Positions 6,001 through 58,841 of a stretch of DNA of 64,000 nucleotides are shown here, in pieces. Origin of the DNA: Macrostomum lignano. Its lineage: Eukaryota. The translations under genes were made by a program, and so were the position numbers. The DNA lies in the NCBI GenBank assembly GCA_002269645.1, contig NIVC01001203.1:124001-188000 (forward strand), read 5' to 3'. Numbering within the stretch: the stretch's first letter is position 1; every line of letters starts with the position of its first letter. Under the pieces are notes generated by a model. The model searched no databases, was not told the DNA's origin, and saw only the letters and a program-made list of their open reading frames with translations.

Positions 6001-6487
6001 CCGCGAATTCACGAAATTGTCTGGCGACGACGGCAGCGGCCGGGCGGACACCCCGACAGCGGGTGGCGAGGACGCGCAGGCCGCTTCAGCAGCCGCTTCA
6101 GGACCTGAGCCTCTGGTTCCTGGCAGCTTTATCTCTGGTGAGTTGCTATATCTTCTATATCTTCATCCTCAATCCTGTCTAAAGCTAGCCAAATCCCCGA
6201 AATCGCCCATTCTCCATCCGTCGCGCAGAATTCCACAGCTGGAAGACGCTGCGCATTGGCGCTCCGTTCAAGCGTCTGAAGACCACCGGTACGAAGGCGA
6301 TTTCGCTGAACCTGCCGCCCGGACGTCACGTGTTGAAGCTGTTCACCAAGGCGCCACTGGGCTACCACTGCAAGATGGTGTCATCCAGTCCATTCAACTT
6401 TGGTACAGAGGAGGACATCCTGCCGCTGCTGCAGAAGGAGCCGCTGAGGTAAGGCTCTAGCAAGCATGTCAAGTTAGTTTAGCTTAT

Positions 6488-6547
<60 letters not shown>

Positions 6548-6574
6548 ATAGTTAGTTAGTTATTTAGTTAGTTC

Positions 6575-6642
<68 letters not shown>

Positions 6643-6666
6643 CTTAGTTAGTTAGTTAGTTAGTTC

Positions 6667-6697
<31 letters not shown>

Positions 6698-6707
6698 CGT
6701 TAGTTAT

Positions 6708-6802
<95 letters not shown>

Positions 6803-6855
6803 TTTAGTTAGTTAGTTAGTTAGTTAGTTAATTAGTCAGTTAGTCGGTTAGTTAG

Positions 6856-6950
<95 letters not shown>

Positions 6951-6966
6951 ATTAGTCAGTTAAACG

Positions 6967-7008
<42 letters not shown>

Positions 7009-20465: not shown

Positions 20466-21539
20466 GAGAGGAGAAGAAGAGAGAGAAGGGGCAGGGAGTG
20501 CAAAAGAGAGGAAACTTCAGGGTTAGCAGACAACATCTTCAGGCAGAGAGGCTATTTTTTATGCCAACAAGTCAGCAAAAGAGACGCCCACAATGGGATA
20601 GTGGAACTGAAAGTCTGCCATGTCGGACCTTACAGCCTTTCAAATCACGGCTGCCCCCCTCCCCCTGCCCGTGAGGCAAAACAAGCATTTGCTTTTTTGG
20701 CAGCTTTTGCTTTTAGACTGGAAGCCATTTAGCCGTCAACATTTAGCAAATTTCCGGCGGCCTTCTAAACCGCGTTGCAACTGAGACTTGCTGTTTATGG
20801 GTCATTTTTTATTACCGTTTTTACGCAACCAGTTCTACACATATCCGTATTTATATAAGGCCGTACTGCCTTGTTGGAAAATGTGATTCTTTCGTAAAAA
20901 GGAAACAACTTTGTGGGACATGAGAAATGAGAATAGATTCCAAATGATGTGAGAAATGATAATAGATTCTAAATGAGATGAAAAATGAGAATAGATTCTG
21001 AATGAGATGACAATTGAAAATCGATAATAAACCAGATGAGCAATGAGAAACCACGGGTGCTTTCAAGCGAATAGTTTTTGCCATAGACACCAAGTCAAAT
21101 TTCGACCTGTTTGGAATTTTTACCCAATTTAGACATGTCACGTGAGCACTGCATAGATTTTCCATTCGCAACTCATTATCAGGGACTATTGAAAAACTGA
21201 GTTTTTCTAGTGCTTACGTGACATGTAACTTAGCGTGACTTACGGGACTGTCCCTTGCTCATTATAATAGAAAATTCACACCTGCAGTTTCGGGTGGCCT
21301 TGGGGGAATAGAGGGATTATTTATGGCATCAGCTAGACAATTGAAGTTTAGTCTCTGGCTATAGACGTATTGAGCTCTTAATGTGAGAAAATTAGTACAT
21401 TAGAAGCATATGGAAAAAACAGCTTTTTACCTTTTTAATCCCTTTAGCATTGAGCGATTTCTTAGCCACGATGCATGTACTATCACGGGAAAATTTCTGA
21501 TCGAATGGTTCGATTTTGCTGGAAATCAGCTAAACTGTT

Positions 21540-22052
<513 letters not shown>

Positions 22053-22459
22053 ATCTTTCTCGAAAACACTGCAACCAAACAAAACCTCTTGCCACTGTTT
22101 CCTACACTTAGCTACAATACTGTCTCTGGGAACCCAGCAACGCATCGCCGCCAACCTCATCCGACCCAGCCGTGATGAATGCCCGGGCCAGTCATTTGTC
22201 ACAGATGATCCTCGGAGAGAGAAAAAACGCAAGGAAGCCCAACCCCCCCCCCCCAATCTGCATGCAGTTTCGGCGGCAAAATATGAAAGATAAGAGCAAA
22301 CTGGCCTGGTGATTAATTGGCTCGAGGGACAAACGGGCTCAGCTGCGAAGTCCCACTGCGAAATGACTTCTTGAGAAGTGCAGATTTTTCTTGCATCGAA
22401 AACACTGCAATCCGGATTTGAATGTTTCTGGGTCTGAAAAGCCTGCGTTTTATGTTATA

Positions 22460-24151: not shown

Positions 24152-24507
24152 TGATCTAGTGTCTATCTAGATCGGTTCCAGTCCAGGTGATAATATTCAG
24201 CAGTCCCGGGCCAACCTCAGCAGTGATTGCAGGGTTCGGGGCTGCAGCACAGTGTTTCAGCAAAACGGGAAAACTGAGGAAAGAGGGAACAGAGAAAGAA
24301 GATCTTCAGCGGACAACTTTTAGCTTTTGATGTCAACTTTGCGTCTTTCTATTGCCTGTCTCTCCGCAACGTTTATTTTTGTTATATTTAACCATCTGCT
24401 AGCTAACGCACCATGCAGCGCTAAGTTCACATCGTCAGTTTCTGGAAAGGGAGGATCGGAGACTTATAAAGCGGACTGAGGGGACCCTTGAGAGGAAGTG
24501 GAGGGAA

Positions 24508-24763
24508 AGGAGAGAGAGGAGAGAGAGGAGAGAGGAGAGAGAGGAGAGAGAGGAGAGAGGAGAGAGAGAGGAGAGAGAGGAGAGAGAGGAGAGAGAGGAG
24601 AGAGGAGAGAGGAGAGAGAGAGAGGAGAGAGAGAGGAGAGAGAGGAGAGAGTAGAGAGGAGAGAGAGAGAGGAGAGAGAGAGGAGAGAGAGGAGAGAGAG
24701 AGGAGAGAGAGGAGAGAGGAGAGAGAGGAGAGAGAGGAGAGGAGAGAGAGAGAGGAGAGAGAG

Positions 24764-24795
<32 letters not shown>

Positions 24796-24954
24796 AGAGA
24801 GGAGAGGAGAGAGAGAGGAGAGAGAGGAGAGAGAGAGAGGAGAGAGAGGAGAGAGAGGAGAGAGAGAGGAGAGAGAGGAGAGGAGAGAGAGAGGAGAGAG
24901 AGAGGAGAGAGAGGAGAGAGAGGAGAGAGAGGAGAGAGAGGAGAGAGAGGAGAG

Positions 24955-24988
<34 letters not shown>

Positions 24989-25269
24989 GAGAGGAGAGAG
25001 AGAGGAGAGAGAGAGGAGAGAGAGGAGGGAGAGGAGAGGAGAGAGAGGAGAAGAGAGAGAGAGGAGAGAGAGGAGAGAGAGAGAGAGGAGAGGAGAGAGG
25101 AGAGAGAGGAGAAGAGAGAGAGAGAGAGAGGAGAGAGAGGAGAAGAGAGGAGAGAGAGGAGAGAGAGGAGAGAGAGGAGAGAGAGGAGAGAGAGGAGAAG
25201 AGAGAGAGGAGAGAGAGGAGAGAGAGGAGAGGAGAGAGAGAGAGGAGAGAGAGAGGAGAGAGAGGAGAG

Positions 25270-25318
<49 letters not shown>

Positions 25319-25494
25319 GAGAGAGAGGAAGGAGAGGAGAGAGAGGAGAGAGAGGAGAGAGAGGAGAGAGAGAGGGAGAGAGAGAGAGGAGAGAGAGGAG
25401 AGAGAGGAGAGGAGAGAGAGAGGAGAGAGAGAGGAGAGAGAGGAGAAGAGAGAGAGAGTAGAGAGAGGAGAGAGAGAGAGAGGAGAGGAGAGAG

Positions 25495-25532
<38 letters not shown>

Positions 25533-25928
25533 GGAGAGGAGAGAGAGGAGAGAGAGGAGAGAGAGGAGAGAGAGGAGGGAGAGAGAGAGAGAGAGAGAGG
25601 AGAGAGAGGAGAGGAGAGAGAGAGGAGAGAGAGAGGAGAGAGAGGAGAAGAGAGAGAGAGGAGAGAGAGGAGAGAGAGAGAGAGAGGAGAGGAGAGAGGA
25701 GAGAGAGGAGAAGAGAGAGAGGAGAGAGAGAGGAGAGAGAGGAGAAGAGAGGAGAGAGAGGAGAGAGAGGAGAGAGAGGAGAGAGAGGAGAGAGAGGAGA
25801 GAGAGGAGAGAGAGGAGAGGAGAGAGAGGAGAGAGAGAGGAGAGAGAGGAGAGGAGAGAGAGAGGAGAGAGAGAGGAGAGAGAGGAGAGGAGAGGAGAGA
25901 GAGGAGAGAGAGGAGAGGAGAGAGAGGA
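24508..25928. repeat. 1.4-kb near-pure purine tract (GA/GGAGA)
   Basis: Direct reading. Confidence 0.97.
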
Positions 25929-26334
25929 GCACTCTGCACCCAACTAAAGCAGACAGCTGCAACAATTCAAGCGAACATGAGAAAGGGCATGGCTGGCAGG
26001 AGAGCCAGCAGTTATTGGCTGAGCCAGTCGCCATGCCAAGCCAATCACCCAGTCCTTTCTGATGTCTATTTTTCCCCAACTCTGTCCACTTGCATCAATT
26101 TCTAAACTCCCTTTGTTGCACTGCTTTTCGGCAAGAGTGCCAAAGTTTGCGGACAAACTTGGTTCATTTGGCAACAGAAGTCAGGCTCGGTGGCTGAAGA
26201 CTCAAGTGTTAAATCATCTGTACCTTAATCGGTAGCAGATCTTTTCCACAATTAATTTTTATTGAAACTTTGAATCATTTGCGAAAATATTTGGTAAGCG
26301 ATCCATTTTAGTTCTTGAGGAACTTGATATATCT

Positions 26335-34150: not shown

Positions 34151-34544
34151 GGTACAGAGACTGTCAAAAGATTAGACAGAGTCTTGGTGTCTCAGAAACT
34201 GCTGAATCAAGCTTGGCAAATTGATGTATTTCAGCTGTTGCAAATACGACCTTATGTCGGATTATTTCTCAGGAGAAACTTACCAGTACAAATCAATTCT
34301 GCAGCTCGCATTATCGTCAGTTTCAATAGCACTGCTAATTACAGAAGAGGCATCGAAATCTTTTAGAACAAAGCTAGTTAAGCCTGATTAATCGAACTTT
34401 ACTCGTCCACTTTGATGCGAATCTACAAAGAGCCTTCTATCCCCCAAGATTCTAACGATCGATATAGTTTGCTGTTCCCCAAGCAAACCGCTAATGTTCA
34501 GTACCTTTATTTTATAAGTAAGAATCTGTCTACCCACACTTCAT

Positions 34545-35340
34545 CTGCTCTTCACACTCTCACCTCTACTCTTCACCCTCTCACCTCTACTCTTCTTATC
34601 ATCTCATATCTACTCATCACACTCTCAACTCTAATCTGCACCCTCTCATATCCACTCTTCACCCTCTCATCTCTACTCTTCACCCTCTCATCTCTACTCT
34701 TCACCGTCTCATGTCTACTCTTCACCCCCTCATCTCTACTCTTCACCCTCTCACCTCTACTCTTCACCCTCTCAACTCTACTCTTCTTATCATCTCATAT
34801 CTACTCATCACACTCTCAACTCTACTCTTCACCCTCTCATCTCTACTCTTCACCCTCTCAGCCCTACTCTTCACCCTCTCATCTCCACTCTTCACCCTCT
34901 CATCTCCACTCTTCACCCTCTCATCTCCACTCTTCACCCTCTCAGCCCTACTCTTCACCCTCTCATCTCTACTCTTCACCCTCTCATCTCTACTCTTCAC
35001 CCTCTCAGCCCTACTCTTCACCCTCTCATCTCCACTCTTCACCCTCTCATCTCTACTCTTCACCCTCTCATCTCCACTCTTCACCCTCTCAGCCCTACTC
35101 TTCACCCTCTCAGCCCTACTCTTCACCCTCTCAGCCCTACTCTTCACCATCTCACCTCTACTCTTCACCCTCTCACCTCTAATCTTCACCCTCTCACCTC
35201 TACTCTTCACCATCTCACCTCTACTCTTCACCCTCTCACCTCTACTCTTCACCCTCTCACCTCTACTCTTCACCCTCTCAGCCCTACTCTTCACCCTTTC
35301 ACCTCTACTCTTCACCTTCTCATCTCTACTCCTCACCATG
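34545..35340. repeat. 21-bp minisatellite (CTCTACTCTTCACCCTCTCAT)
   Basis: Direct reading. Confidence 0.95.
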
Positions 35341-35637
35341 CCATCTTTGATCGCCACTTCATTCCATTTAATCCTCTTCACCTTTCCCCAACTAAAAAAT
35401 TGTAAAAACATTCAATTTTCCATACACTGTTTTACACTACCAAAAGTTTTACACTGCTAAAAGTAGCATACTAGGAAAGCAGTAGTTGAAATGAAAAAAA
35501 AACAGCTAGCTAGCCTAAATTCAAACAGCATTTGATTGGTCGAACAGTCCAGTATAGGAAAGCATAAAACAGAAAAACCTCTTCACAGAAGACGCTTACA
35601 GATTTTCCCTCGGGTTGATTAAATTTGTCAAAAAAAA

Positions 35638-45700
<10,063 letters not shown>

Positions 45701-47060: not shown

Positions 47061-47629
47061 TAGCAAATGTACAGTGTTTTGGAATAACTTTATTTATAGC
47101 CTTCTCTGCACCCCGAGAGTGGAGAGGCTACGTTTAGCCATAACAGTTTAGTGAGAAATTCTAACCACTGCCCTCCCCTCTGTATTGGCAAACTCTGCAG
47201 CAGTTTAACAGTGGATGGCAATTGGCAATTGGCAAATCGAGGGAATCCAGCATGGTTTGTAAAAGCGAAAGATTTATGAAAAGGCAATGCGATGCAATGC
47301 AATACAACCCTACTAAATTAGGCACACCATGGAAATTTTAGGTTTCTTTTAAAGGTACTGTGTAAATACTAAATGGCCTTCTAAGAAATGCGTATTTCCT
47401 TGGTTGTTAGAGTTAGACTGATGCAGACTGCAGTGAAGTTGAAGATACACAAAATTCCTTTCAGGGCTGCAACTGCAAATTGGCAAGAAAGATGACGGGA
47501 TCTAAGCATGAGAACAATCATGAGAGTACTACGTCCCACAAACTGGCTTTCCAAACAGGGATGGTCAGACTTTTACCTTGAAGGCCAGATAAAGAATCCA
47601 GCTCATAGCTGAGGGGCAGATGAAAGTGG

Positions 47630-48288
47630 AAAGAAGAAGGAATAGACGATTCGAAGAGAGGAGAGGCGACAGAGGGGATAAAAGAAAAGATAAAAGATAA
47701 TAGGAGAGATGAGGGGGTGAGGACGATGAGAGAGAGGGGAGAAGAGGGGAGAGAGGAAAAGCGAGAGGAGAGAGGAAAAGCGAGAGGAGAGAGGAGAGAG
47801 TAGAGATGAGAGAGCAGAGAGCTGCAGATGAGAGGAGGGAGGAGACAGCAGAGAGGAGAGCAGAGAGGAGAGAGGTGAAAGAAGAGATGAGAGAATAAAG
47901 GGAAGAGAGAAGAGATAAAGAGGAGAGTGGAGAGAGAGAAGAGAGGGAGAGAGAGTATAGAAAAGGGAAGAGAAGAGAAAAGAAGAAAGGAGAAAGGAAA
48001 GTGAGGAGTCAAAAAAGGGGAAAGAAAAGAGTACAGAGGAGAGAGGTGAGAGAACATATGAGACAGAGATACCAGATTAAAGAGGGGGATGAGAGAGCAG
48101 AGACGAGAGTGAACAGATAAAAGATGGGAGAGTAGAGAGAACAGAGGAGAGGTTACAGAGACGAGAGGAGAGAGGAGAGACAAAGGTAGAGAAGTGAGTG
48201 AGGAGAGAAGAGAGGAAAGAGGAGAATGGAGAGGGGAGAGAGTAGAGAGAGGAGGAGAGATAAGAGAGAAAGACAGAGAAGAGAGAGA

Positions 48289-48335
<47 letters not shown>

Positions 48336-48349
48336 TAAGAGCGAAAGAC

Positions 48350-48393
<44 letters not shown>

Positions 48394-48750
48394 AGCAGAG
48401 AGAAATGAGAAGAGATAAGAGAGAAAAGATAAAAGAAGAAAGGAAAGATGAGAGAGCAAAGACGAGAGAGAAAAGAGGTGAGGGAAGAGACGAGAGAGAG
48501 GGGAGAGATGAGAGAGTAGAGGAGAGAGTTAAGAGAAGAGAGAAAAGAATAGAAAGGAGAAGGAAGATAAGAGAGAAGAGGGGGTGAGAGGAGAGAGGAG
48601 AGGGGGAGAGAGGAGAGAGGAGAGGAGAGAGAAAAGAAGAGACAAGAGATAAGATAAGAGAGATGAAAGAGAAGAGAGATGAGGGGAGATAGGAGAGAGG
48701 AGAGAGGAGAGACGAGGGACGAGAGAGATGAGAGGAAACAAAGAGACGAT
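47630..48750. repeat. Degenerate GA-rich low-complexity tract
   Basis: Direct reading. Confidence 0.9.
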
Positions 48751-49449
48751 AGAAATTTTAAAGGATCCAAGGGATGTAGGGAGAGTCAGGGAGAGACGAG
48801 AGTTTAGCAATATATGTTTTAGAGTCAGACAGACATTGCCTGACATTCTGTGCAGTACCCTAGCCAACAATGTCTCAAACCCTAATTTTACACGAATGTG
48901 CTCCATTTTATGTCTACCTCTATCCTACTAACTATTAACAAGTTTTTGTTTGTGTATGGCCTTAGATTTCAGAATACATGCAAAAGTAGTTCCGGGTATT
49001 GGAATTCCCCGGGTTCAAAATCCGCGGGTTTCAACGGCTTGTCAAATTATAAGCTAGAATTATTAGGCATTGTTTCTTGGGTTCTCTAAATTTATAACAC
49101 ATACTATTCTAATAATTCTATTCCACCGTCAATTGCATGTATGAAAAATCATAAATAAAAGTCCAAACTGGTAAGAAAAAAATTAGAATCACCATAAACC
49201 GTTAGATAAACCGTTTAATGGCCCTCTCGAAGTTCCTCGACAGACAGACAATTTTGACAGCTTTTATGCCGTTACTAGAAGTGAAATTCTTTGCCTGTTA
49301 TATCTAAAGTCAATAAGTGATTTATTTTAGCGATTCATAATTAAAACTAAAAGAAAACAAGATTTGAATAGCTTTTAACAAATTTGCTCATCCTTGCTTG
49401 GCCTAGCCATGCAACACTTTTGTCCTTTACAACACAGTCTTCCTTTTGT

Positions 49450-49790
49450 TGCCTTTCGACCGACATTCCAATGGCGATATGAACAGCAGTGACGTTTGAG
49501 AATTGTCAGGAACTGTGAGCTTTATGACATAATGAGTCACTGTTCCGCAGGAGAGTCACGTCTCTTGAAAGCAGTCCCTGTCCAAAGTGTCTCAAATCAG
49601 CTCCTGATGCTGATTAGATTAATCGAAATCTTTGAAGCAAAACGGAGACTGCGAGTACATGATGTGTCACAGACTGAGTTCGCTTCTCTAACCAGCGACA
49701 TTCAGTTGGATTTTGGCTTCCAGCTGTATTTGACATTTTTTGCAGTTTCTCTTTCTAGTTCGAAACAGTTCAAATAAGCATTGAGGCTTT
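49450..49790 (-). pseudogene. Decayed copy of the ankyrin module
   Basis: Minus-strand frames give QLEAKIQLNVAG*, EKRTQSVTHHV, QHQELI*DTLDRDCFQET*..TVTHYV, LTVPDN and TAVHIAI, collinear with the intact modules but broken by stops, frameshifts and deletions. Confidence 0.7.
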
Positions 49791-51049: not shown

Positions 51050-52063
51050 TCAGTCTGTAGTCAGGAACCTGTGCCTCATCAAGTGTGCCGCGGACTTTCT
51101 CAGAGTTCGGTCTTTGGCGGTGCAACAGCTGTAGAAATCCTGCAGATCTGGGGAGCAATCAGCTGACAGAGCGGGGGCTCCGTCGTTCGACAGCTTCATG
51201 GCCATTTTCAGCAAGCTTCTGGTGTCGGCGTGAGGTCTTGCTCCGGTGGCCATCTGGAAGACCGAGCAGCCGAACGCCCAGATGTCGGCACTTTTGCTGT
51301 ATAACGTTTTGTCTGATTCACCCGATCCCAGTAACTCAGGTGCCATAAAGTTTAGAGTGCCCTTGGGTGTTTGAGAAGAGGCTGAGATGTGACTGACTGA
51401 CTGCTCCAGCTTGATTGACAGGCCGAAATCGATCAGCTTGATTCGTGAGTTGCCGACAAGAACTATGATGTTGGTGCAGTTGATGTCTCTGTGAATCACA
51501 GGTGGCTCTTGGCTGTGCATGTAGAGCAGGGCACTGCAGATCTATAATCGTTTTTATTGAGCAGCATTTGGCATTGGATCTAGTCTAGTAGAGTCAAATG
51601 TCGTAAGGAAGAGATTTGAAAAGGCAATCAAAGCGTACACTCGTATTGCACAATACAAAACAGATCTGACCAGAGCAATTACATGGGAAAACTTTTTACC
51701 TGTTTACTGAAATGACGAACCGTTTTTTCATCGAGTGGTTTGTTGTTAATGTAATTCTCTAAGGTGCGACCGTCCAGCAACTCCATAAACACGACGAGTG
51801 TCGCTGGCTCGGGCTGAGCAACGTCCAAGAACTTGACAATGTTGTCGTGCTGCAGACGGCGCAGGTTCTTCTCACTCTCGACAGCTCCGTTGACCTCTCT
51901 TTCAAGAGTTTCAAGCTCATCGCCAAGCTGGATGGGCAGCTTGAGAGTCTTTGTAGCGCATCGGATGCCCTTGTCGGTGATGACTTCGTGGATTTCGCCA
52001 AAACCTCCCCTGCCGATGAGTCTAACCGAGGTCCAGCTTTCCTGGTAAAGTGGCTCCTCCGTG
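51050..52063 (-). CDS. Ser/Thr kinase domain, two exons (MEKK/STE11-like)
   Basis: IGRGGFG, ATK, HRDINCTN, DFG, GTLNFMAPE, ADIWAFGC; intron 51542-51699. Confidence 0.9.
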
Positions 52064-55000
52064 CTGCATAGGTACAAATTATTATAGATGAAAGTTTTTT
52101 TCAGCATTGTGCTCATTTTTTACCTTATTTTTACCTAGCTTTGACTTTCCGCGTGGGAAAATCAAAATACGCTGTTGCATTCTTATGTTAAACTAATTCT
52201 GACTCAAGTGGCTGAAATCTCTCAGTATGCTATCGCTGAATAGCCTTTTATCCATGCTTTAGTTAGAATTTTTTCTCATGAAAAAAACTGACCGATTCCT
52301 GAATCTAAAAAGCACTTGAATGCCTCTTTCTACCCGTACTGACGTCCGTTTTAGCAGACAAAATAGCAGTAAACTCGTACTTAGGCGGTAGTCATACTCG
52401 TAGGTACAGTATATTGCATTGACCCATGGCACTCAGATACGAGTACTCACACTTGATTTTACAACGACGACACAGATCTCTTTATCACCAGGAATGTACA
52501 GACCAAAGACCACTAGAAGTTACCGTTGCATCAGCGGTACGCTCATATAACGACGATACGAAGATAACTTCTAGTGGTCCTTGGTACAGGCTATGTGTCT
52601 TTTTTGTTGGTGATGCTCATGGACGTGAAATGTTCAACGAGCTTGAATCCTGATATCTGAGAGCGATTTCAAGCTCAATACCACACTCGGACTTTCACAA
52701 AAGTTCGACTATCTGCATTATACAAAAAATGAACCCTCACTCACCTTGAGGGTGTGCTTCTTGAGCTGTGCTGCAGCATCTCCGAGGAATTTTTCACCCT
52801 CTTTGCGTCAAATTCCTTGCAGCGTCGATAAAATTTCGACAGAGCAGTTACCAGTCGCATAGAAGGCTTCGGCATCGCAGAGTCGGTCAGGGTGAGCATC
52901 GGGATCTGGAACATCGCAGCATCCCCGCTTGGTTGCTGCGTTTCTTTTAACTCAAACACCGCACATCCGAGTAGCTCGGGTGCCGTGGAGTGGTTGGTCC
53001 CGCTCGGGTTCGTGCTGAGTCCGCAGCTGGCCACGGCCTGAGGAAAGTCGATAACCTTGATAAGACCGTCAGTAGTGATCACGATGTTTGAGCACAATGC
53101 ACTGCTGTGCGCAGTGAAATGTCGTTGGCGATCTAGACATCTGAGGCCCGAGCAGACCTAGAATTTGGTGTTGAGCTAGGGTTCATTGTGCCTGTCTAAT
53201 CGCAAATAGAATCACTGTTTAAGAACTTTTAAAAGCAGATTCATTTATTAAATATTTGAACCAGTTTTTAGCTCACATCATTGCAATTTAATATCTGTCA
53301 CTTAAAAAGAGCAATACGTTAATATCGTCAAAGTCAAACAGAATAGAGTCAAATTAGCTCCAAGACACGGAGCTTTTGTAATTAAACTAACCTGACGCGC
53401 AAACTCTGCTACATCCACCTGTGGAATCAGGTTTAGCTGTCTCTCTATCAACTCAAATAGGCTGTGTCCGGAGACAAGCACATCGAGGCTGTAGAAACCG
53501 CCAGTCTTCAGGAACTCACACTTGAGAAACTGCCGGATGCTGGTGGGATAAATAATATCTTTGACTGCTCGTATTTCTATTTCTAATATTTTCAGTTCTA
53601 ACGACTTTTTGGCGAGAATCTTGGTGGCTGCAGTCTGGATTTGGTCAGCAAGAGTCGTGTACACCTTGCCGAATTCGCCAGAGCGAATGATCGGCTTTTT
53701 CAATGGCTGAGGTACTGTTCTGGGCTTTTGAACTGTTGATGCGGTACTGCAATTGTTACTTTTGTTCATACTGTTAGCAGCGCGAACACTGCAAGATTTT
53801 TGGGAATATTTTATTTGTGCCACCGACGTTCGACCATCTTCGAACTTTCGAACATTCGGACGCGGCCCTGGCTGATTAGGCTGTTTTGGTGACTTCTCAC
53901 CGGCCAACCAAGACAGCTTTCTGAATTTCCTATCACTATGCTTGTCCATTCTTACGTAGTCAGAAATGTTCTCTCCTTTACTGTTCTTCAGAGCAAACAT
54001 CTGATGTCCAAGTTGGTCGGCCAGATACTGCAGCAACTCGGCTGACTGGTGCTGGGCAGCCAGATGGACGGCTGTGTCTCCGTGTTTGTCGCGAACTGTA
54101 AGACACTGGGATCCGCACTCTTGAACAAGCCATTCAAGATTTATGTCATTTACGAGATTTGTAGCAGCGCAATGAAAAGCCGTTCTGTCTCGAAAGCCTT
54201 TCATTCGATACAAGCATTCACGCCCGAGCACTATCTTTATCAGTTTCAACGAATCGACGCCCTGATATTGAGCGGCAAGATGTACGGCCGTGTTTCCGTC
54301 TTCGTCGGGAACTGTGAGACAGTCGCAGCCTAACTCTCTGATGAGCCACTCAAGTGGTGCTGTGCTATCGGAATTCATCGCAGCAAGATGAAAAGGCGCT
54401 CTTTTATGGTGACTAACTCTTTGTTTGAAGCAGTCAGTACCAAGTTCTTTTTTTATCAGTTCCATTGAATCGACACCTTGACACTGAATAGCAAGGTGGA
54501 CTGCGGTATTGCCATCCTCGTCAGGAATCGTGAGCCAGTGGCGTCCCAATTTTTTCACAATCCATTTCAATGCGGCATTGCTCACCTTGTTCATGGAAGC
54601 ATAATGAGTTACCGTTTTGCCAGATCGGGTCTTCTTGTTGAAGAGCAGATCATTTTTCAGTGAGTCTTGAAGTAGCACCATCCACGAGTCGGTGTGGTAC
54701 TTTGCAGCCAGGTGCACAGGTGTCTCCCCACAATCGTTCGTGCAAGTCAGACATTCTGATCCGAGCCTGTTAATCAAGGCCTTCAAACACAGCGGACTGC
54801 GCCACTTGCAGACTACGTGATGGGCCACGGATTGAGTTTTTTCTTCTTTGGAAAAGTCTTTGTAGCCACCGACGCTCAGATCAAAGTTGGAGTCGAGCTG
54901 CTGGAAAAGCCGCTGCAGCAGTTCCTCATCTCCTTTTTCCAGCGCTGCTCGCAGCCGGGACTCATAAAGGCTTCTGCAATCGAAATGTAATGTCGGTAGA

Positions 55001-56717
55001 TTTAAGATTCGCTGGTGCAATGTTTAAAGCTAAAAAATGAATTTTATCGGCTTCATAATTGAAGTCTTCACAGCTAACAACACGCGTTCCAGGTATAAAA
55101 TTTTCTCTGCCAACAAAATATGGGATATTGATCAACTCACCGACTCGAATAGTCTTTAGTCGCAGTTGCTGTAATCGGTTTATGGCACACCTGACTAGGA
55201 GCTGAATCAGGCTTCATTGACAGCTGGCTGGCAATCCAAGCCCGGTTCCTGGCTCTGCGGTCTGCATCGGCAGCCTTCTCCACAAAGTCGGCCAATGTCT
55301 CTCCTTTATTGTTTTTCAAGGAGAAAATCAGTGGCCCAAGTTGATCAGATAAAAACTGGAGCAACTTATCCGACTGATACTGGGCAGCAAGATGGACGGC
55401 TGTGTTTCCATCACTGTCGGGCACTATCAAACAGTCTTGTCCTAACTCATCGACGAGCCACTCGAGTGTTGCGCAACTTGAATTTAAGGCAGCGTAGTGG
55501 AATGCTGTTCTGCTCCGAAAGCCTTTAATATCAGGAAAGCAGCCAGAACCGAGCACTCTCTGTATCAGATTCATGGAATCCACACCTTGATGCTCTGCAG
55601 CTAGATGGATAGCCGTGTGTCCTCTTTCATCGGCAACTGTGAGACAGTCACTTCCGCATTCTTTTACAATCCAAGCTAGCGATAAGCTACTTGTAGGATT
55701 CATAGCTGCAAAGTGAATTGCACTCTGCTTGTCACGGTTTTTCAAATGAAAACATCTTGAACCGAGCTCTTTCTTAATCAGCTCCATCAAATCAGTGTCT
55801 TGGTATTGTGCAACCAGATGAACCGGTGTGTCTCCAAATCTGTCTTGAACCGTTAGGCTTTCGGGTCCACACTCCTTGACAAGCCATTTCAGTGTTTCGC
55901 TGTTCACATTGTTAGTAGCAGCGCAGTGAACGGCCGTCCTGTTTCGATTACCTCCTTTTTGAAGGAAGCATTCAGATCCTAACTCACCTTTTATCATTCT
56001 CATCGATTCGACACCTTGAGACGCAGAGGCGAGAAGAACAGCCGTGTTTCCGTCTTCGTCAGGAATTTTAAGACATTCGGATCCGAACTTTTTGACTAGC
56101 CATTCTAGCACCGCATTGGTTCCAATGTTTGTAGCAGCACTGTGAAAAACTGTTCTATTCCGATAACCTGCCAGGTCCTTAAAGCAGTCGGTTCCGAGCT
56201 CTCTCTTTATCAGTTCCATCGAACCGACGCCTTGATACTCTGCGACCGTGTGGACGGCTGTGTCTCCATCATTGTCAGGAATTGTGAGACAATGGCGTCC
56301 CAGCTGTTTTACGAGCCACAAAAGCGACGAGTTGTTCACCTCATTCATGGCTGCATAGTGAGTCACTGTTTTACCCGACTTAGTCTTCTCCTTGAAGCAG
56401 TCCTCGCTAAGAGCGTCTCGAACCAGCTGAATCCAAGAGGCGTCCTGGTGCTTAGCAGCCAGGTGCACAACAATTTCGGCCCAGTCGTTTCTGCAAGTCA
56501 GACAGTCGGGTCCGAATTTCTCAATCAGGAGCTTCAGGCACTGCAGATTGCGCACCTTGCAGACCACGTGATGCGCAATCGGCTGAGTTCGTTCCCGATT
56601 GACGAAGTAGCTGTAGCCGCCAACTGTCATCTGGCAGTTGGTTCGAAGCAGAGGAATGAGTTGTTGCAACTGTCCATCGTCTCTTGCTTCAAGAGCCTTT
56701 CTCAGAGTTGACTCCAT
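51050..56717 (-). CDS. Ankyrin-repeat tandem kinase: ANK block - ANK block - pseudokinase - STE/MAP3K-like kinase (about 1475 aa)
   Basis: Exons 56717-55141, 54973-53392, 53157-52745, 52063-51700, 51541-51050. Junctions CG|GTGAGT..TGCAG|A (phase 2), CAG|GTTAGT..CTAG|GTC (0), AG|GTGAGT..GCAG|C (2), CAG|GTAAAA..ATAG|ATC (0); 4428 nt total, divisible by 3. Confidence 0.8.
52745..53710 (-). CDS. Pseudokinase domain, two exons
   Basis: IRSGEFGKVY, AATKI, HSSALCSN in place of HRDxKxxN, DFP in place of DFG, APE retained, subdomain IX largely deleted. Confidence 0.75.
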
Positions 56718-58091
56718 TAGGCTGCTTTGCTGCTTTATGTCTTCGAAAACGCACTTTTTTACTTATTGCAGTGTCTTTTGTCTGCTGGCTTAAATAGGCA
56801 GAAACGACACGAGCACTGGCCGCTTGGTCGCACGTTAGGGCGTTCGTTAGTTGTCAAGACAAAAAGAATGACAGAGTATCTCCAGTGTTAAGAAATATAA
56901 GCTTAGACACTTAAGCTAATCTAAAACGGTCAGATGCTCATTTCTTTTTAGTCGTCCTTGCCTGAGCCGGAATGCTCGTAGCTTTCTAGATTCTTAAAGT
57001 GTTCTTTAGCGGGCTCATTTTCGACACTAGCTACTCCATTGTATTTGAAAGAGCCGCGCTGTCTCTGCATCGCAATGGATGACAGACTGCATCAGCCGTC
57101 AAAATATAGCTTTGAGTTTTTTTACATTATATTTTGTTTTCTCTTATGCAGACAAGAACGTAGACAGCCAGTTTTTTTATGAAAAGTGAATCACTGAGTT
57201 TTTAAGGCTGTTTTATCCAAGCCATCCTTTTCTAAGAGTTGATTATTTTTAGCTTACTTTTATAATATAGAGGTAAGAACAATAAGGCAGCTTAGGCGGT
57301 TGAAATGTTACCTGCTGTCAGCTTCTAACTCAGAGCTATAAACGAGCTAGTTAGGTAGGTGGGGGGTATAATTTATTCCGATGAATCATTGCTGCTGCTT
57401 TCATGGAATTTTACTAACAATGAGTTGCAAGTAAGCAAAGGTAAGCGGTGTAAAAGCCAAATTGTCTAGCTTAGCTATATAAAGTATGCGTGTTCTAAAT
57501 CCAGTGTTTACAATAAAATACTCTTTTTGATACAGGTGTAATGTTTTAATCCGTGCCTTAGAGGCAATCAAATGTTGCTAAATCATTGTCGCTACTAATG
57601 CAGGAATGTACATCTCAATCTTTATGTACATCGACGCCAATAAATATATCGATAACTGACACGCGGGACCGTCTCACACTGCCATACACTTTTTGTCACG
57701 CAAGCAAGTGGCAGGTAAAATGAGTATAAGTTATGGATTCCTCATCTGGACCAGGCCATAGACTAAAGAAAAGCGTATTTGTTTGGCCTTTTACTTTTAT
57801 ATTGTAGTTATCGAAAGTTTATAGAAGGTAAATCAGTTTATTTTTCACATCAATTAGAAAAAAGTCAAAGTCATTGACAAGTGCTATAACTGAATAAAAA
57901 TCTTACAACATTAAATTTATACACGTTAGTACGAGAGTAATTTAATACAAAATTTGGTGAAAACAGCTCCATTACGAGTTATAAACAGATTTGACAAGAA
58001 AAGTCTAAATAAGCAATTTAAAACTGAACAGAAATCCAAGAAAGAATGGGAATCGATGGTACATGTAGTCTTCAAGAGTTTTAGTCTGCCT

Positions 58092-58841
58092 TCAAAGAGA
58101 TAAACCAAGTTGAGTAGTCAGAAACTGAAGCGCCTCAGCCGATCGGCAATCGGCGGCCAGTCGAAACGCATCGTTGCCAGTTTCGTCAGGAACCGTGAGA
58201 CTGGCGGTGCCGCATTCCTGTACCAGCCATTCGAGCGATGCGCCACTGTCAGGATTGAGAACTGCGCAATGGACTGCGGTCCTGCTCAACCAACCTTTTT
58301 GATTGAAGCAGTCGGACCCAAGCTCTCTCTTCATCAGTTCCATGGAATCTGTGCTCTGATACTGGGCAGCTAGATGAACTGCTGTGTCGCCGTATTCGTC
58401 GGGCACTGCGAGACACCCAGATCCCAACTTTTTGACGAGCCACTTCAACGATAGATTGGTCATCTCATTCATAGCGGCATAATGGGCTACTGCTCTTCCA
58501 GACCTGGCTGTATCCTGAAAGCAGCTCATGCCTAGAGTGTCCCGAATCAGCTCCATCCACGAGTCGTCCTGATGCTCCGCCGCCAGTTGCACCGCAGTTT
58601 CATCCCAGTCGTTTCGGAACTTCAAACAGTCCGATCCGAATCTGTCAATCAGCAGCTTCAGACACCGCAGATTGTGCGACTTGCAGGCCACGTGATGCGT
58701 CACAGACTGGACTCGCTCTCGTTTGTCCCAATCCTTGTAGCCGCCGACCGTCAGCTCAAAATTACAGTCGAGCTGCTGGCAGAGCGACTGCAGCTGAGCA
58801 TCGTCTGCAGCTTCCAGCGCCACTCGAAGCCTCGGCTCCAT
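58092..58841 (-). pseudogene. Truncated paralogous ankyrin module (249 aa to a premature TGA; homology continues as RQTKTLEDYM)
   Basis: Same N-cap (LR.AL...D..QLQ.L...TVGGY...QSVTHHV.CK) and repeat units as the blocks at 53-57 kb; QLGLSL*RQTKTLEDYM aligns to QLGPLIFSLKNNKGETLADFV. Confidence 0.65.

What the first reader, a model, noticed from the sequence alone, without database searches (positions are those of the whole stretch)
51050..56717. Hidden ankyrin-ankyrin-pseudokinase-kinase gene: a possible animal counterpart of tandem-kinase sensors
Seen: five separate ORFs in the track join through canonical, phase-matched splice sites into one reading frame of about 1475 aa: two large ankyrin arrays, a dead kinase, then an apparently active MAP3K-like kinase. 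Established: ILK and TNNI3K have ANK plus one (pseudo)kinase, RNase L has ANK-pseudokinase-KEN, JAKs have pseudokinase-kinase, and plant tandem kinase proteins (Rpg1, WTK1) are kinase-pseudokinase immune receptors. I do not recognise ANK(n)-pseudokinase-kinase as a described animal architecture. Inference: the ankyrins sense a ligand, the pseudokinase acts as an inhibitory switch or decoy, and the kinase signals.
Basis: partly seen in the sequence, partly recalled or inferred. Interest (0 to 1): 0.82.

Follow-up and report, generated by a model that had tools for sequence, protein, structure and literature searches.

The report
Flatworm ankyrin-kinase gene with dead-kinase cassette
The five reading frames do join cleanly into one 1475-residue ankyrin-ankyrin-dead kinase-kinase protein, but it is one member of a large, tandemly duplicating ankyrin-kinase gene family of the flatworm Macrostomum lignano, and neither its real mRNA structure nor any sensor role is shown.

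Summary
On the minus strand, five exons (56717-55141, 54973-53392, 53157-52745, 52063-51700, 51541-51050) join through GT..AG sites into 4428 nt (1475 aa) with no internal stop. The product has about 13 plus 9 ankyrin repeats, a degenerate kinase (HRD>HSS, DFG>DFP, two core deletions) and an intact STE/WNK-like kinase.

The window is Macrostomum lignano. The locus belongs to a lineage-specific family with ANK-only, ANK-kinase and ANK-kinase-kinase members. Transcript-based paralogs show the ancestral unit: ANK exon, phase-2 intron, kinase N-lobe exon, phase-0 intron, kinase C-lobe exon. ANK1's donor and the active kinase's acceptor sit at the positions of those ancestral sites.

Exons 2+3 (ANK2 plus dead kinase, 1995 nt) form a frame-neutral cassette. 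Including it gives 1475 aa; skipping it gives a canonical 810-aa ANK-kinase. ANK2 has no start codon of its own and shows the same codon-position divergence pattern as its neighbouring paralogs, which favours inclusion.

The dead kinase models poorly (pLDDT 36), and no transcript evidence could be retrieved. UniProt already holds an automatic fused model of this locus (A0A1I8JBZ3). The analogy to plant tandem-kinase immune sensors has no support.

Verdict: a real gene with a plausible new domain arrangement. Modest interest.

The parts
56789..56796 (-). TATA-like box (TATTTAAG), 72-79 nt upstream of the ANK1 ATG; putative promoter of the transcription unit
   Evidence: Read from the sequence. 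A similar box (TGTATATAAAAA) lies about 80 nt upstream of the ANK0 ATG. Nothing comparable lies before exon 2. Its role as a promoter is inferred, not tested.
55141..56717 (-). Exon 1: ATG, family N-cap, about 13 ankyrin repeats (ANK1) and a linker tail; ends in a phase-2 donor, CG|GTGAGT
   Evidence: The donor has the same phase and heptamer as the ancestral ANK/kinase intron donor of paralog P0006. If unspliced, the frame stops at once (TGA inside GTGAGT).
54974..55140 (-). Intron 1 (167 nt), GTGAGT...TTGCAG
   Evidence: It has no AATAAA or ATTAAA and GC of 0.35, against 0.48-0.54 in the exons.
53392..54973 (-). Exon 2: second N-cap without a start codon, about 9 ankyrin repeats (ANK2, to about 53911), a linker (53910-53698) and the pseudokinase N-lobe (from 53697)
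   Evidence: At the position of the paralogs' ATG GAG this copy reads TAT GAG, and the ATG present there is out of frame (29-aa ORF). The first in-frame ATG is at 54681, after three out-of-frame ATGs.
53158..53391 (-). Intron 2 (234 nt), phase 0, at FARQ|VC
   Evidence: It is at the same position as the phase-0 intron of the transcript-based paralogs P0006 and P0043.
52745..53157 (-). Exon 3: pseudokinase C-lobe (HSS at 53109-53101 region, DFP from 53049, APE from 52983); ends in a phase-2 donor, AG|GTGAGT
   Evidence: HRD>HSS, DFG>DFP, and a 19-aa gap removes the DxWxxG/alpha-F start. The TGA stop is embedded in the donor.
52064..52744 (-). Intron 3 (681 nt), GTGAGT...ATGCAG; contains a 38-nt inverted repeat (52502-52585) and, in its last 53 nt, an in-frame ATG at 52116
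   Evidence: It has no AATAAA or ATTAAA. The 53 nt between ATG 52116 and the acceptor are 30% GC, like an intron, against 52% in exon 4.
51700..52063 (-). Exon 4: N-lobe of the intact type-B kinase (GRGGFG from 52014, beta-3 Lys at 51954-51952)
   Evidence: The acceptor (phase 2, CAG|C) lies within about one residue of the ancestral kinase-exon acceptor of P0006.
51542..51699 (-). Intron 4 (158 nt), phase 0, at FSKQ|IC
   Evidence: a family-conserved intron position.
51050..51541 (-). Exon 5: C-lobe of the intact kinase (HRDINCTN from 51493, DFG from 51430, APE from 51343) and the stop codon
   Evidence: The AlphaFold2 pLDDT block means are mostly 77-98, with dips in short loops. The nearest structures are MST4, TNIK, MST3, WNK and ASK1.
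58092..58841 (-). Neighbouring paralog ANK0: a stand-alone 249-aa ankyrin-only gene (ATG..TGA, no donor at its stop, AATAAA at 57842)
   Evidence: It is 53% identical to the start of ANK1. It belongs to the tandem cluster, not to the fusion gene.
49478..49688 (-). Decayed relic of an ankyrin N-cap with in-frame stops, downstream of the gene
   Evidence: It shows what a dead copy looks like in this cluster, in contrast with the intact 665-codon ANK2-pseudokinase frame.

Best explanation
This is one transcription unit of the flatworm Macrostomum lignano. It belongs to a lineage-specific, tandemly duplicating family of ankyrin-repeat STE/WNK-like protein kinases.

The ancestral unit has three coding exons: ANK array plus tail, then a phase-2 intron, then the kinase N-lobe, then a phase-0 intron, then the kinase C-lobe. 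Here duplication has placed a second unit (ANK2 plus a type-A kinase) between the ANK1 exon and the exons of a type-B kinase. That inserted unit has lost its start codon, its ANK/kinase intron and its catalytic residues.

The inserted block (exons 2+3, 1995 nt) starts and ends in phase 2, so it behaves as a frame-neutral cassette. Cis-splicing from ANK1's GTGAGT donor gives one of two products. With the cassette it is the 1475-aa ANK1-ANK2-dead kinase-kinase protein, which I judge somewhat more likely to be made. Without it, it is an 810-aa ANK1-kinase protein of the canonical family type.

Inferred mechanism, not shown: the ankyrin arrays bind partner or substrate proteins. The C-terminal type-B kinase is the only catalytic module. 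The eroded kinase remnant acts at most as a spacer or docking segment, not as a folded regulatory pseudokinase.
For: Shown:
- The in-frame joins and domain content.
- The organism and family: all close hits are M. lignano proteins.
- The ancestral exon structure and intron phases in the transcript-based paralog P0006, with gg|gtgagt...cccag|c.
- The same phase-0 intron in both kinase domains here and in P0043.

For a single unit:
- Only 167 nt separate the ANK1 stop from ANK2.
- Introns 1 and 3 contain no AATAAA or ATTAAA.
- Exon 2 has no usable start codon.
- Exon 4 has no in-frame start after its acceptor. The upstream ATG at 52116 lies in 30%-GC, intron-like sequence.
- The M. lignano spliced leader ends in AUG (PMC8629364), but that AUG is out of frame at both strong acceptors, giving ORFs of 4 and 14 aa.
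- A strong donor upstream in cis favours cis-splicing over trans-splicing (the rule quoted in PMC8629364).

For cassette inclusion:
- The 665 codons contain no stop or frameshift, whereas a true relic nearby is full of stops.
- ANK2 shows the same excess of third-position change as ANK0 and ANK1: the (p1+p2)/2p3 ratio is 0.50-0.59 against 0.57.
- All pseudokinase indels are in frame.
- The paralog P0002 also has a second ANK N-cap without a Met that is continuous with the first array.
- Transcript-based P0004 splices tandem ANK blocks together.
- Transcript-based P0043 carries two kinase domains joined within one exon.

For the skipped form: the 810-aa product is in frame and matches the ANK-type-B-kinase architecture of P0169.
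Against: - No transcript, EST or annotated model for this exact locus could be retrieved. None of the 1475-aa, 810-aa, 302-aa, ANK0 or ANK1 products is in the protein collection, and the junction and exon-5 queries found no near-identical protein.
- Those searches were clearly incomplete, because they also missed P0001, which contains the query sequence.
- ANK-only products exist in the family (P0011; the 294-aa gene in L004), so ANK1 could also end at its stop.
- A donor motif overlapping the pseudokinase stop arises by chance at roughly 1-4%, and its phase match to exon 4 is then automatic.
- The pseudokinase is structurally doubtful.
- The missing ATG rests on a single base (TATGAG against ATGGAG). 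An assembly indel there would restore an independent start and break the exon 1/2 frame.
Confidence: 0.6

Rival explanations
1. The ANK2-pseudokinase block is a decaying duplicate lying inside a 3.1-kb intron and is always skipped. The only protein made is the 810-aa ANK1-type-B kinase.
For: - Skipping is in frame and gives the canonical family architecture.
- ANK2 has lost its ATG.
- The kinase has lost its catalytic Asp and the DFG Gly, and has core deletions.
- AlphaFold2 gives pLDDT 36 for the pseudokinase.
- The paralog model P0002 has ANK-ANK-kinase without a pseudokinase.
Against: - The block is 1995 nt with no stop or frameshift, although it is only 41-54% identical to its paralogs.
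- ANK2's codon-position pattern is indistinguishable from that of the neighbouring paralogs ANK0 and ANK1.
- All indels are in frame.
- The cassette has consensus-type splice sites at both ends (TTGCAG|A and AG|GTGAGT).
- A genuine relic 1.4 kb downstream is riddled with stops.
Confidence: 0.2
2. The ORFs are separate genes, possibly an operon resolved by spliced-leader trans-splicing: ANK1 alone (526 aa); ANK2-pseudokinase started from the AUG of the spliced leader; and a kinase-only protein (302 aa) from ATG 52116.
For: - In M. lignano 30% of genes are SL trans-spliced and 15% lie in operons, with spacing around 100 bp. The SL ends in AUG and the acceptor motif is [T/C]TNCAG (PMC8629364).
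- The ANK1 stop lies 163 nt before a TTGCAG acceptor.
- SL-AUG joined at the weaker acceptor gag|TCCCGG (54961/54960) reads M-SRLRAALEKG... in frame.
- A TTTCAG lies about 95 nt upstream of ATG 52116.
- Transcript-supported ANK-only genes exist in the family.
Against: - SL-AUG is out of frame at both strong acceptors.
- The in-frame alternative uses a GAG acceptor that does not fit the motif.
- There is no canonical poly(A) signal after either internal stop.
- ATG 52116 lies in AT-rich, intron-like sequence with an upstream out-of-frame ATG.
- Strong GTGAGT donors lie upstream in cis of both acceptors, which favours cis-splicing.
- The exact 526-aa and 302-aa products are not on record.
Confidence: 0.13
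3. One reading: a single ANK-ANK-pseudokinase-kinase receptor in which the ankyrins sense a ligand, the pseudokinase is a decoy or inhibitory switch, and the kinase signals. This would be an animal analogue of plant tandem kinase immune proteins.
For: - The in-frame architecture.
- The family is lineage-specific, tandemly duplicated and variable in repeat number, a pattern also seen in immune gene families.
- Pseudokinase-kinase regulation is established in JAKs and GCN2, and plant TKPs act in pathogen resistance (PMC13519141).
Against: - No expression, infection or interaction data exist.
- The kinase lineage is unrelated to the plant RLK/Pelle TKPs.
- The pseudokinase lacks half of its alpha-F region and is not modelled as a kinase fold.
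- The cassette may be skipped.
- The paralog with two intact kinases (P0043) does not fit a decoy model.
Confidence: 0.05

Closest known systems
Uncharacterised Macrostomum lignano ANK-kinase family (e.g. PAA84534.1 / A0A267GGN5, ANK-kinase, 669 aa; PAA71750.1 / A0A1I8J3B8, ANK-kinase-kinase, 1180 aa; A0A1I8I6V5, ANK-ANK-kinase, 1167 aa; A0A1I8JBZ3, the automatic model of this locus)
   Same: - The same N-cap and 36-aa ankyrin repeats (46-54% identity).
- The same two kinase subtypes (type A, HRDIKCSN; type B, HRDINC[TS]N).
- The same phase-2 ANK/kinase intron and the same phase-0 intra-kinase intron.
   Different: This locus combines two arrays with a catalytically dead type-A domain followed by an intact type-B domain. 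Its ANK2 unit has lost its start codon and its ANK/kinase intron. No family member has been studied.
JAK family and GCN2 (pseudokinase directly N-terminal to a kinase)
   Same: The order is pseudokinase then kinase, and it arose by duplication. In JAK and GCN2 the pseudokinase regulates the kinase (PMC13519141).
   Different: The kinase lineage here is unrelated (STE/WNK-like). There are no FERM/SH2 or HisRS-like/RWD domains. The pseudokinase has core deletions and a low-confidence model, so it may not be a folded regulatory domain. Linkage of the two domains depends on an unverified splice.
Plant tandem kinase proteins (Rpg1, WTK1/Yr15, RWT4, Pm57)
   Same: Two kinase-like domains occur in tandem, one of them degenerate. 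The family is lineage-specific and duplicating.
   Different: Plant TKPs derive from RLK/Pelle kinases, are mostly ordered kinase-pseudokinase, lack ankyrin arrays and have genetic evidence for pathogen recognition. None of this applies here.
ILK / TNNI3K (ANK plus TKL-group kinase or pseudokinase) and RNase L (ANK-pseudokinase-KEN)
   Same: An N-terminal ankyrin array is followed by a kinase-like domain.
   Different: The kinase here matches STE20, WNK and MAP3K best, not the TKL group. Pfam finds no KEN nuclease domain. The ankyrin arrays are of a family-specific type.
WNK and STE20/MAP3K kinases (MST3/4, TNIK, MAP3K2, ASK1)
   Same: These are the best sequence and fold matches of the active domain. 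Its catalytic-loop context, PPVIHRDINCTNI, resembles the WNK sequence PPIIHRDLKCDNI.
   Different: Identity is only about 25-30% and there is no orthology. The domain keeps the canonical beta-3 Lys that WNK lacks. Its catalytic-loop Lys is replaced by Asn.

Membership tests
M. lignano ANK-kinase family (uncharacterised) | Family-specific N-cap (M-E-x-x-L-R-x-A-L-E...) and 36-aa ankyrin repeats of the DGNTAVHLAAQ.QG / RTAFH.AA.N type | tested here: met
   ANK1 and ANK2 are 41-54% identical to ANK0, P0006, P0004 and P0013.
M. lignano ANK-kinase family (uncharacterised) | A phase-2 intron between the ANK tail and the kinase, and a phase-0 intron at FS[RK]Q|IC inside the kinase | tested here: met
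   P0006 exons are 9988-11123, 11552-11939 and 12182-12667, with gg|gtgagt..cccag|c. P0043 has introns at the same kinase position. This locus has the same phases, except that ANK2-pseudokinase has lost the phase-2 intron.
Tandem pseudokinase-kinase proteins (JAK/GCN2 type) | Both kinase-like domains lie in one polypeptide | tested here: inconclusive
   The splice is in frame and has consensus sites, but no transcript evidence exists and the cassette may be skipped.
Tandem pseudokinase-kinase proteins (JAK/GCN2 type) | The pseudokinase keeps a stable kinase fold able to dock on or regulate the kinase | tested here: inconclusive
   It scores 39 bits on Pkinase. However, it has a 7-aa alpha-C gap and a 19-aa alpha-EF/alpha-F gap, and its mean pLDDT is 35.6 with a 23-sequence family alignment. 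The alignment is shallow, so this is not proof of disorder.
Plant tandem kinase proteins (TKP) | Kinase domains of the plant RLK/Pelle lineage | tested here: not met
   The best matches are the animal STE20, WNK and MAP3K kinases. The organism is a flatworm.
Plant tandem kinase proteins (TKP) | A role in pathogen recognition or resistance | not testable with these tools
   No expression or genetic data are available. Literature searches found nothing on this family.
ILK / TNNI3K (ANK plus TKL kinase) | A kinase domain of the TKL/MLK lineage | tested here: not met
   The PDB sequence and fold searches are led by MAP3K2, MST3/4, TNIK, WNK and ASK1. No ILK or TNNI3K appears among the top hits.
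RNase L / Ire1 (pseudokinase or kinase plus KEN nuclease) | A C-terminal KEN ribonuclease domain | tested here: not met
   The Pfam scan of the full 1475-aa product shows only Ank and kinase families.
Catalytically competent eukaryotic protein kinase (for the C-terminal domain) | G-loop, beta-3 Lys, alpha-C Glu, HRD Asp, catalytic-loop Asn, DFG, APE and subdomain IX Asp | tested here: met
   GRGGFG, CATK, HRDINCTN, DFG, APE and DIWAFG are all present, and the Pkinase score is 166 bits. Caveat: the catalytic-loop Lys (HRDxK) is Asn in all type-B paralogs. Activity has not been assayed.
SL trans-spliced operon gene of M. lignano | A [T/C]TNCAG acceptor about 100 nt downstream of the preceding gene, giving a translatable mRNA | tested here: inconclusive
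   TTGCAG lies 163 nt after the ANK1 stop, but the SL-AUG ORF there is 4 aa and the first three ATGs are out of frame. Only a non-consensus GAG acceptor gives an in-frame SL-AUG (PMC8629364).

The most novel reading that the evidence does not exclude
The full 1475-aa ANK-ANK-pseudokinase-kinase protein is the main product. Together with its rapidly duplicating relatives (ANK-only, ANK-kinase, ANK-kinase-kinase), it forms a flatworm-specific surveillance or receptor-like system. In that system variable ankyrin arrays recognise ligands and a kinase-derived decoy or regulatory segment gates an STE/WNK-like kinase. This would be an animal parallel to plant tandem kinase immune proteins, evolved independently.
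Probability: 0.05. Interest if true: 0.8.

Novelty: new variant of a known kind. Interest (0 to 1): 0.35.

Why it matters
If the long isoform is real, it shows how tandem duplication together with conserved intron phases can build a multi-array, tandem (pseudo)kinase protein in one step. It would also add an animal lineage in which ankyrin arrays are coupled to tandem kinase domains.

More broadly, the M. lignano ANK-kinase family (ANK-only, ANK-K, ANK-ANK-K, ANK-K-K) is a large, unstudied, lineage-specific kinase expansion. M. lignano is a regeneration model with transgenesis and RNAi, so the family's function is testable. As it stands, the locus is an annotation problem with an interesting evolutionary history. 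It is not evidence for a new signalling principle.

Tried and rejected
1. The search for homologous proteins timed out with the 1475-aa, 536-aa and 259-aa queries.
2. Two short queries, one across the exon 3/4 junction and one on exon 5, returned nothing useful. They also missed P0001, which contains those sequences, so the negative result carries no weight.
3. Exact look-ups found nothing for the ANK1 ORF, ANK0 ORF or the 457-aa neighbouring ORF, nor for the 1475-aa, 810-aa and 302-aa models. I therefore could not tell which assembly the window comes from, or see an annotation for this locus.
4. I looked for a conserved ANK-typeA-typeB arrangement in paralogous loci. L002 and L005 hold ANK only, and L004 holds two ANK-typeA units. 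No type-B kinase was found in the loci fetched.
5. Codon-position divergence could not separate the pseudokinase from the active kinases: the ratio is 0.76 against 0.75, and third positions are near saturation.
6. AlphaFold2 of pseudokinase plus kinase gave no usable interface, because the pseudokinase half was below pLDDT 50.
7. Rfam found nothing in the window.
8. Literature searches for the family and for paralog gene identifiers found nothing.
9. I considered kinase-only translation from ATG 52116 and rejected it as the main reading. The 53 nt between that ATG and the acceptor are 30% GC, end in a polypyrimidine/CAG acceptor, and are preceded by an out-of-frame ATG.

Full report
**What is in the sequence**

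The six-frame ORF list shows five minus-strand ORFs at 56717-55137, 55020-53302, 53097-52741, 52116-51679 and 51520-51050. I read the strand and joined the segments 56717-55141, 54973-53392, 53157-52745, 52063-51700 and 51541-51050 by script. The result is 4428 nt, 1475 codons plus a stop, with no internal stop. The intron boundaries are GTGAGT..TTGCAG, GTTAGT..TTCTAG, GTGAGT..ATGCAG and GTAAAA..TTATAG.

Pfam finds ankyrin families throughout residues 1-880 and two protein-kinase stretches. A motif scan shows about 13 repeats of 36 aa in the first array and about 9 in the second.

The first kinase-like domain (residues about 952-1190) scores 39 bits on Pkinase, just above the 31.7-bit cut-off. 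The second (1202-1472) scores 166 bits.

**The two kinase domains**

I aligned both domains with family kinases. The C-terminal domain has GRGGFG, the beta-3 Lys, HRD, the catalytic Asn, DFG, APE and DIWAFG. Its one oddity is HRDINCTN, where Asn replaces the catalytic-loop Lys. The other type-B paralogs share this.

Its nearest solved relatives by sequence are MAP3K2, MST3, WNK1/3, TNIK and ASK1, at E about 1e-26. By fold they are MST4, TNIK, MST3, MAP4K4, WNK and ASK1, at about 25% identity. The catalytic-loop context is most like WNK. "MAP3K-like" is therefore too specific; STE/WNK-like is fair.

The upstream domain reads HSS for HRD and DFP for DFG. It has lost the first glycine of the G-loop, lacks 7 residues around alpha-C, and lacks 19 residues that include the DxWxxG motif and the start of alpha-F.

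AlphaFold2 was run with a 22-23-sequence family alignment. The active domain's block means are mostly pLDDT 77-98, with dips in short loops. The upstream domain gets below 50 in the two-domain run and a mean of 35.6 when modelled alone. The alignments are shallow, so this is not proof of disorder. It still gives no support to a well-folded regulatory pseudokinase.

**Organism and family**

A profile-free HMMER search of 1.84 billion representatives with residues 1-1190 found 101 proteins at E<=1e-30. All of the close hits I looked up are Macrostomum lignano proteins, apart from one unnamed protein from a Logan assembly.

P0001 (UniProt A0A1I8JBZ3, 1803 aa, from the older ML2 assembly) is an automatic model of this locus. 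Its matching segments are collinear with the window from 58.9 kb to 43.2 kb. It fuses ANK0, ANK1, ANK2, the dead kinase and the kinase, and it uses the same exon 3/4 junction (STPS|STEEPLYQ). It uses a different, phase-0 ANK1/ANK2 junction and skips several ankyrin repeats. The gene is therefore not wholly unannotated, but this model is not transcript evidence.

Other family members:
- ANK-kinase: P0006 (PAA84534), P0012, P0020.
- ANK-ANK-kinase: P0002.
- ANK-only: P0011 (PAA84521), P0004, P0013.
- A protein with canonical ankyrin repeats and two intact kinase domains: P0043 (PAA71750, 1180 aa).

The kinases fall into two subtypes: type A (HRDIKCSN, DFGLAKE) and type B (HRDINC[TS]N, DFGLSIKLEQSVSH). 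The dead domain here is a degenerate type A, sharing SGHSLFEL with the type-A kinases. The active one is type B.

**Gene structure of transcript-based paralogs**

PAA accessions come from the Mlig_3_7 assembly. According to PMC8629364, that annotation is built on a genome-guided transcriptome.

P0006 maps to three exons in L004: 9988-11123, 11552-11939 and 12182-12667.
- The first intron separates the ANK tail from the kinase. It is phase 2 and reads gct gg|gtgagt...ttcccag|c gcc.
- The second intron is phase 0, at FSRQ|IC.

P0043 in L001 has introns at the same kinase position. The C-lobe of its first kinase and the N-lobe of its second lie in one exon, 8461-9405. A true ANK-plus-tandem-kinase protein therefore exists in this species without depending on any splice guess.

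P0004 joins tandem ANK blocks by splicing. P0011 splices its ANK exon to a short terminal exon, and no kinase lies within 10 kb.

**Reinterpreting the locus**

ANK1's donor (CG|GTGAGT, phase 2, in the variable linker after the conserved AWIAS motif) matches the ancestral ANK-exon donor in phase and sequence. The exon-4 acceptor (ATGCAG|C, phase 2, within one residue of P0006's in the alignment) matches the ancestral kinase-exon acceptor.

Between them lies a second unit, ANK2 plus a type-A kinase. That unit has lost three things:
- its ANK/kinase intron;
- its start codon: where the paralogs read ATG GAG it reads TAT GAG, and the ATG there is out of frame and opens a 29-aa ORF;
- its catalytic residues.

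Exons 2+3 total 1995 nt (665 codons) and both flanking introns are phase 2. The block is therefore a symmetric cassette. Including it gives 1475 aa. Skipping it gives an in-frame 810-aa ANK1-type-B kinase, which is the architecture of P0169.

**Is it one transcription unit?**

Evidence for:
- Only 167 nt separate the ANK1 stop from ANK2, and neither intron 1 nor intron 3 has AATAAA or ATTAAA. By contrast, ANK0, the stand-alone upstream paralog (58841-58092), has no donor at its stop and has an AATAAA 250 nt downstream.
- Exon 4 cannot start translation on its own. After its acceptor the first in-frame ATG is far inside the N-lobe. The in-frame ATG at 52116 lies in the last 53 nt of the intron, which are 30% GC against 52% in the exon and end in a polypyrimidine/CAG acceptor.

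M. lignano trans-splices 30% of its genes to a leader that ends in AUG. It has operons with spacing of about 100 nt and the acceptor motif [T/C]TNCAG (PMC8629364), so I tested that rival directly.
- The SL-AUG gives a 4-aa ORF at the 54974 acceptor and a 14-aa ORF at the 52064 acceptor.
- Only the non-consensus acceptor gag|TCCCGG (54961/54960) puts the SL-AUG in frame, reading M-SRLRAALEKG.
- Strong GTGAGT donors lie upstream in cis of both acceptors, which by the rule quoted in that paper favours cis-splicing.

**Is the cassette included?**

Evidence for inclusion:
- There are 665 codons without a stop or frameshift, although the sequence is only 41-54% identical to its paralogs.
- Divergence at the three codon positions for ANK2 (p1 0.30-0.32, p2 0.26, p3 0.50-0.55) is the same as between ANK0 and ANK1.
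- All indels in the dead kinase are in frame.
- A genuine relic of an ANK N-cap at 49688-49478 is full of stops.
- Paralog P0002 also has a second N-cap without a Met, continuous with the first array.

Evidence against inclusion:
- The dead kinase is eroded.
- P0002 lacks a pseudokinase.
- The GTGAGT at the dead kinase's stop could arise by chance. I estimate roughly 1-4%, since it needs a G before the stop, a TGA or TAA stop, and G or GT after it. Its phase match to exon 4 would then be automatic.

I put the 1475-aa isoform at a little over even odds, given a single transcription unit.

**What could not be done**

No transcript evidence was obtainable.
- The word-indexed protein search timed out three times. 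It then returned essentially nothing for two short queries and missed even P0001, so its silence is uninformative.
- Exact look-ups of seven candidate products found none.
- I therefore cannot say which assembly the window comes from or what, if anything, is annotated there.
- A one-base assembly error at TATGAG would restore ATGGAG. That would break the exon 1/2 frame, so it needs checking.

**Function**

Only the domain logic is available. Ankyrin arrays are protein-binding modules, and the type-B kinase has every catalytic residue except the loop Lys. My committed reading has two parts:
- The ankyrin arrays recruit partners or substrates to a C-terminal STE/WNK-like kinase.
- The dead-kinase segment acts as a linker or docking surface, not as a JH2-like switch.

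All of this is inference.

The comparison with plant tandem kinase proteins rests only on the domain count. The kinase lineage, domain order, ankyrin arrays and biology all differ, and no infection or expression data exist. Literature searches found no description of this family or of an ANK-pseudokinase-kinase animal architecture. The known cases are JAK and GCN2 (pseudokinase-kinase), RNase L (ANK-pseudokinase-nuclease) and plant TKPs (PMC13519141).

**Verdict**

The locus is a real, probably expressed gene of a lineage-specific, tandemly duplicating flatworm ANK-kinase family. The proposed architecture is a plausible new variant that intron-phase-compatible duplication made possible. The long isoform is unverified, the pseudokinase is doubtful as a folded domain, and the sensor hypothesis is speculation. 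Interest is modest (0.35).

Noticed in passing
window 58092-58841 (-): ANK0 is a stand-alone 249-aa ankyrin-only paralog. It has its own ATG, a TATA-like box about 80 nt upstream, a stop without a donor, and an AATAAA at 57842. The automatic UniProt model A0A1I8JBZ3 fuses it to the downstream gene, probably wrongly.
   Followed up: partly
window 49478-49688 (-): A decayed fragment of the family's ankyrin N-cap with in-frame stop codons lies downstream of the kinase exons. It is a dead copy in the same tandem cluster.
   Followed up: partly
window 52502-52585 (intron 3): An inverted repeat of 38 nt (79% complementary, 8-nt loop) lies inside the 681-nt intron between the dead kinase and the active kinase. 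It could be a small hairpin element or a MITE remnant. Rfam has no match.
   Followed up: partly
window 5858-12193 (+): Exons of an androglobin gene: Pfam Androglobin domain II (5858-6460), IV (8315-8968) and V (9140-9649), followed by a Pro/Ala-rich exon at 11273-12193.
   Followed up: partly
window ~39400-45700 (+): A Cys-loop ligand-gated ion channel gene. The ligand-binding and transmembrane regions are at 42821-43369, and the last transmembrane region at 45086-45700. An upstream exon near 39.4 kb encodes ...[25 protein letters not shown]. Its introns are packed with microsatellites.
   Followed up: partly
window 21400-22250, 24400-26100, 34400-35460, 36200-36950, 37200-39500, 40000-40500, 43150-43900, 47500-48800: Very long microsatellite or low-complexity blocks, each open in several frames. 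One example is a tetranucleotide repeat that reads as DRQT/CLSV; another is a GA-rich block with GC skew +0.82 at 24-26 kb. They give many spurious long ORFs.
   Followed up: no
L004 558-3152 and 9988-12667 (NIVC01000368.1): A paralogous locus holds two tandem ANK-typeA-kinase units. The upstream one is annotated only as a 294-aa ANK-only gene, although kinase exons follow it at 2158-3152. The same question of fusion versus truncation therefore recurs elsewhere in the family.
   Followed up: partly
L001 6001-9952 (NIVC01001141.1), protein PAA71750.1: This is a transcript-based 1180-aa protein with canonical ankyrin repeats and two apparently intact kinase domains joined within one exon. It is present in about five near-identical copies. 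It is a cleaner example of an animal ANK-plus-tandem-kinase protein than the finding itself, and it is uncharacterised.
   Followed up: partly
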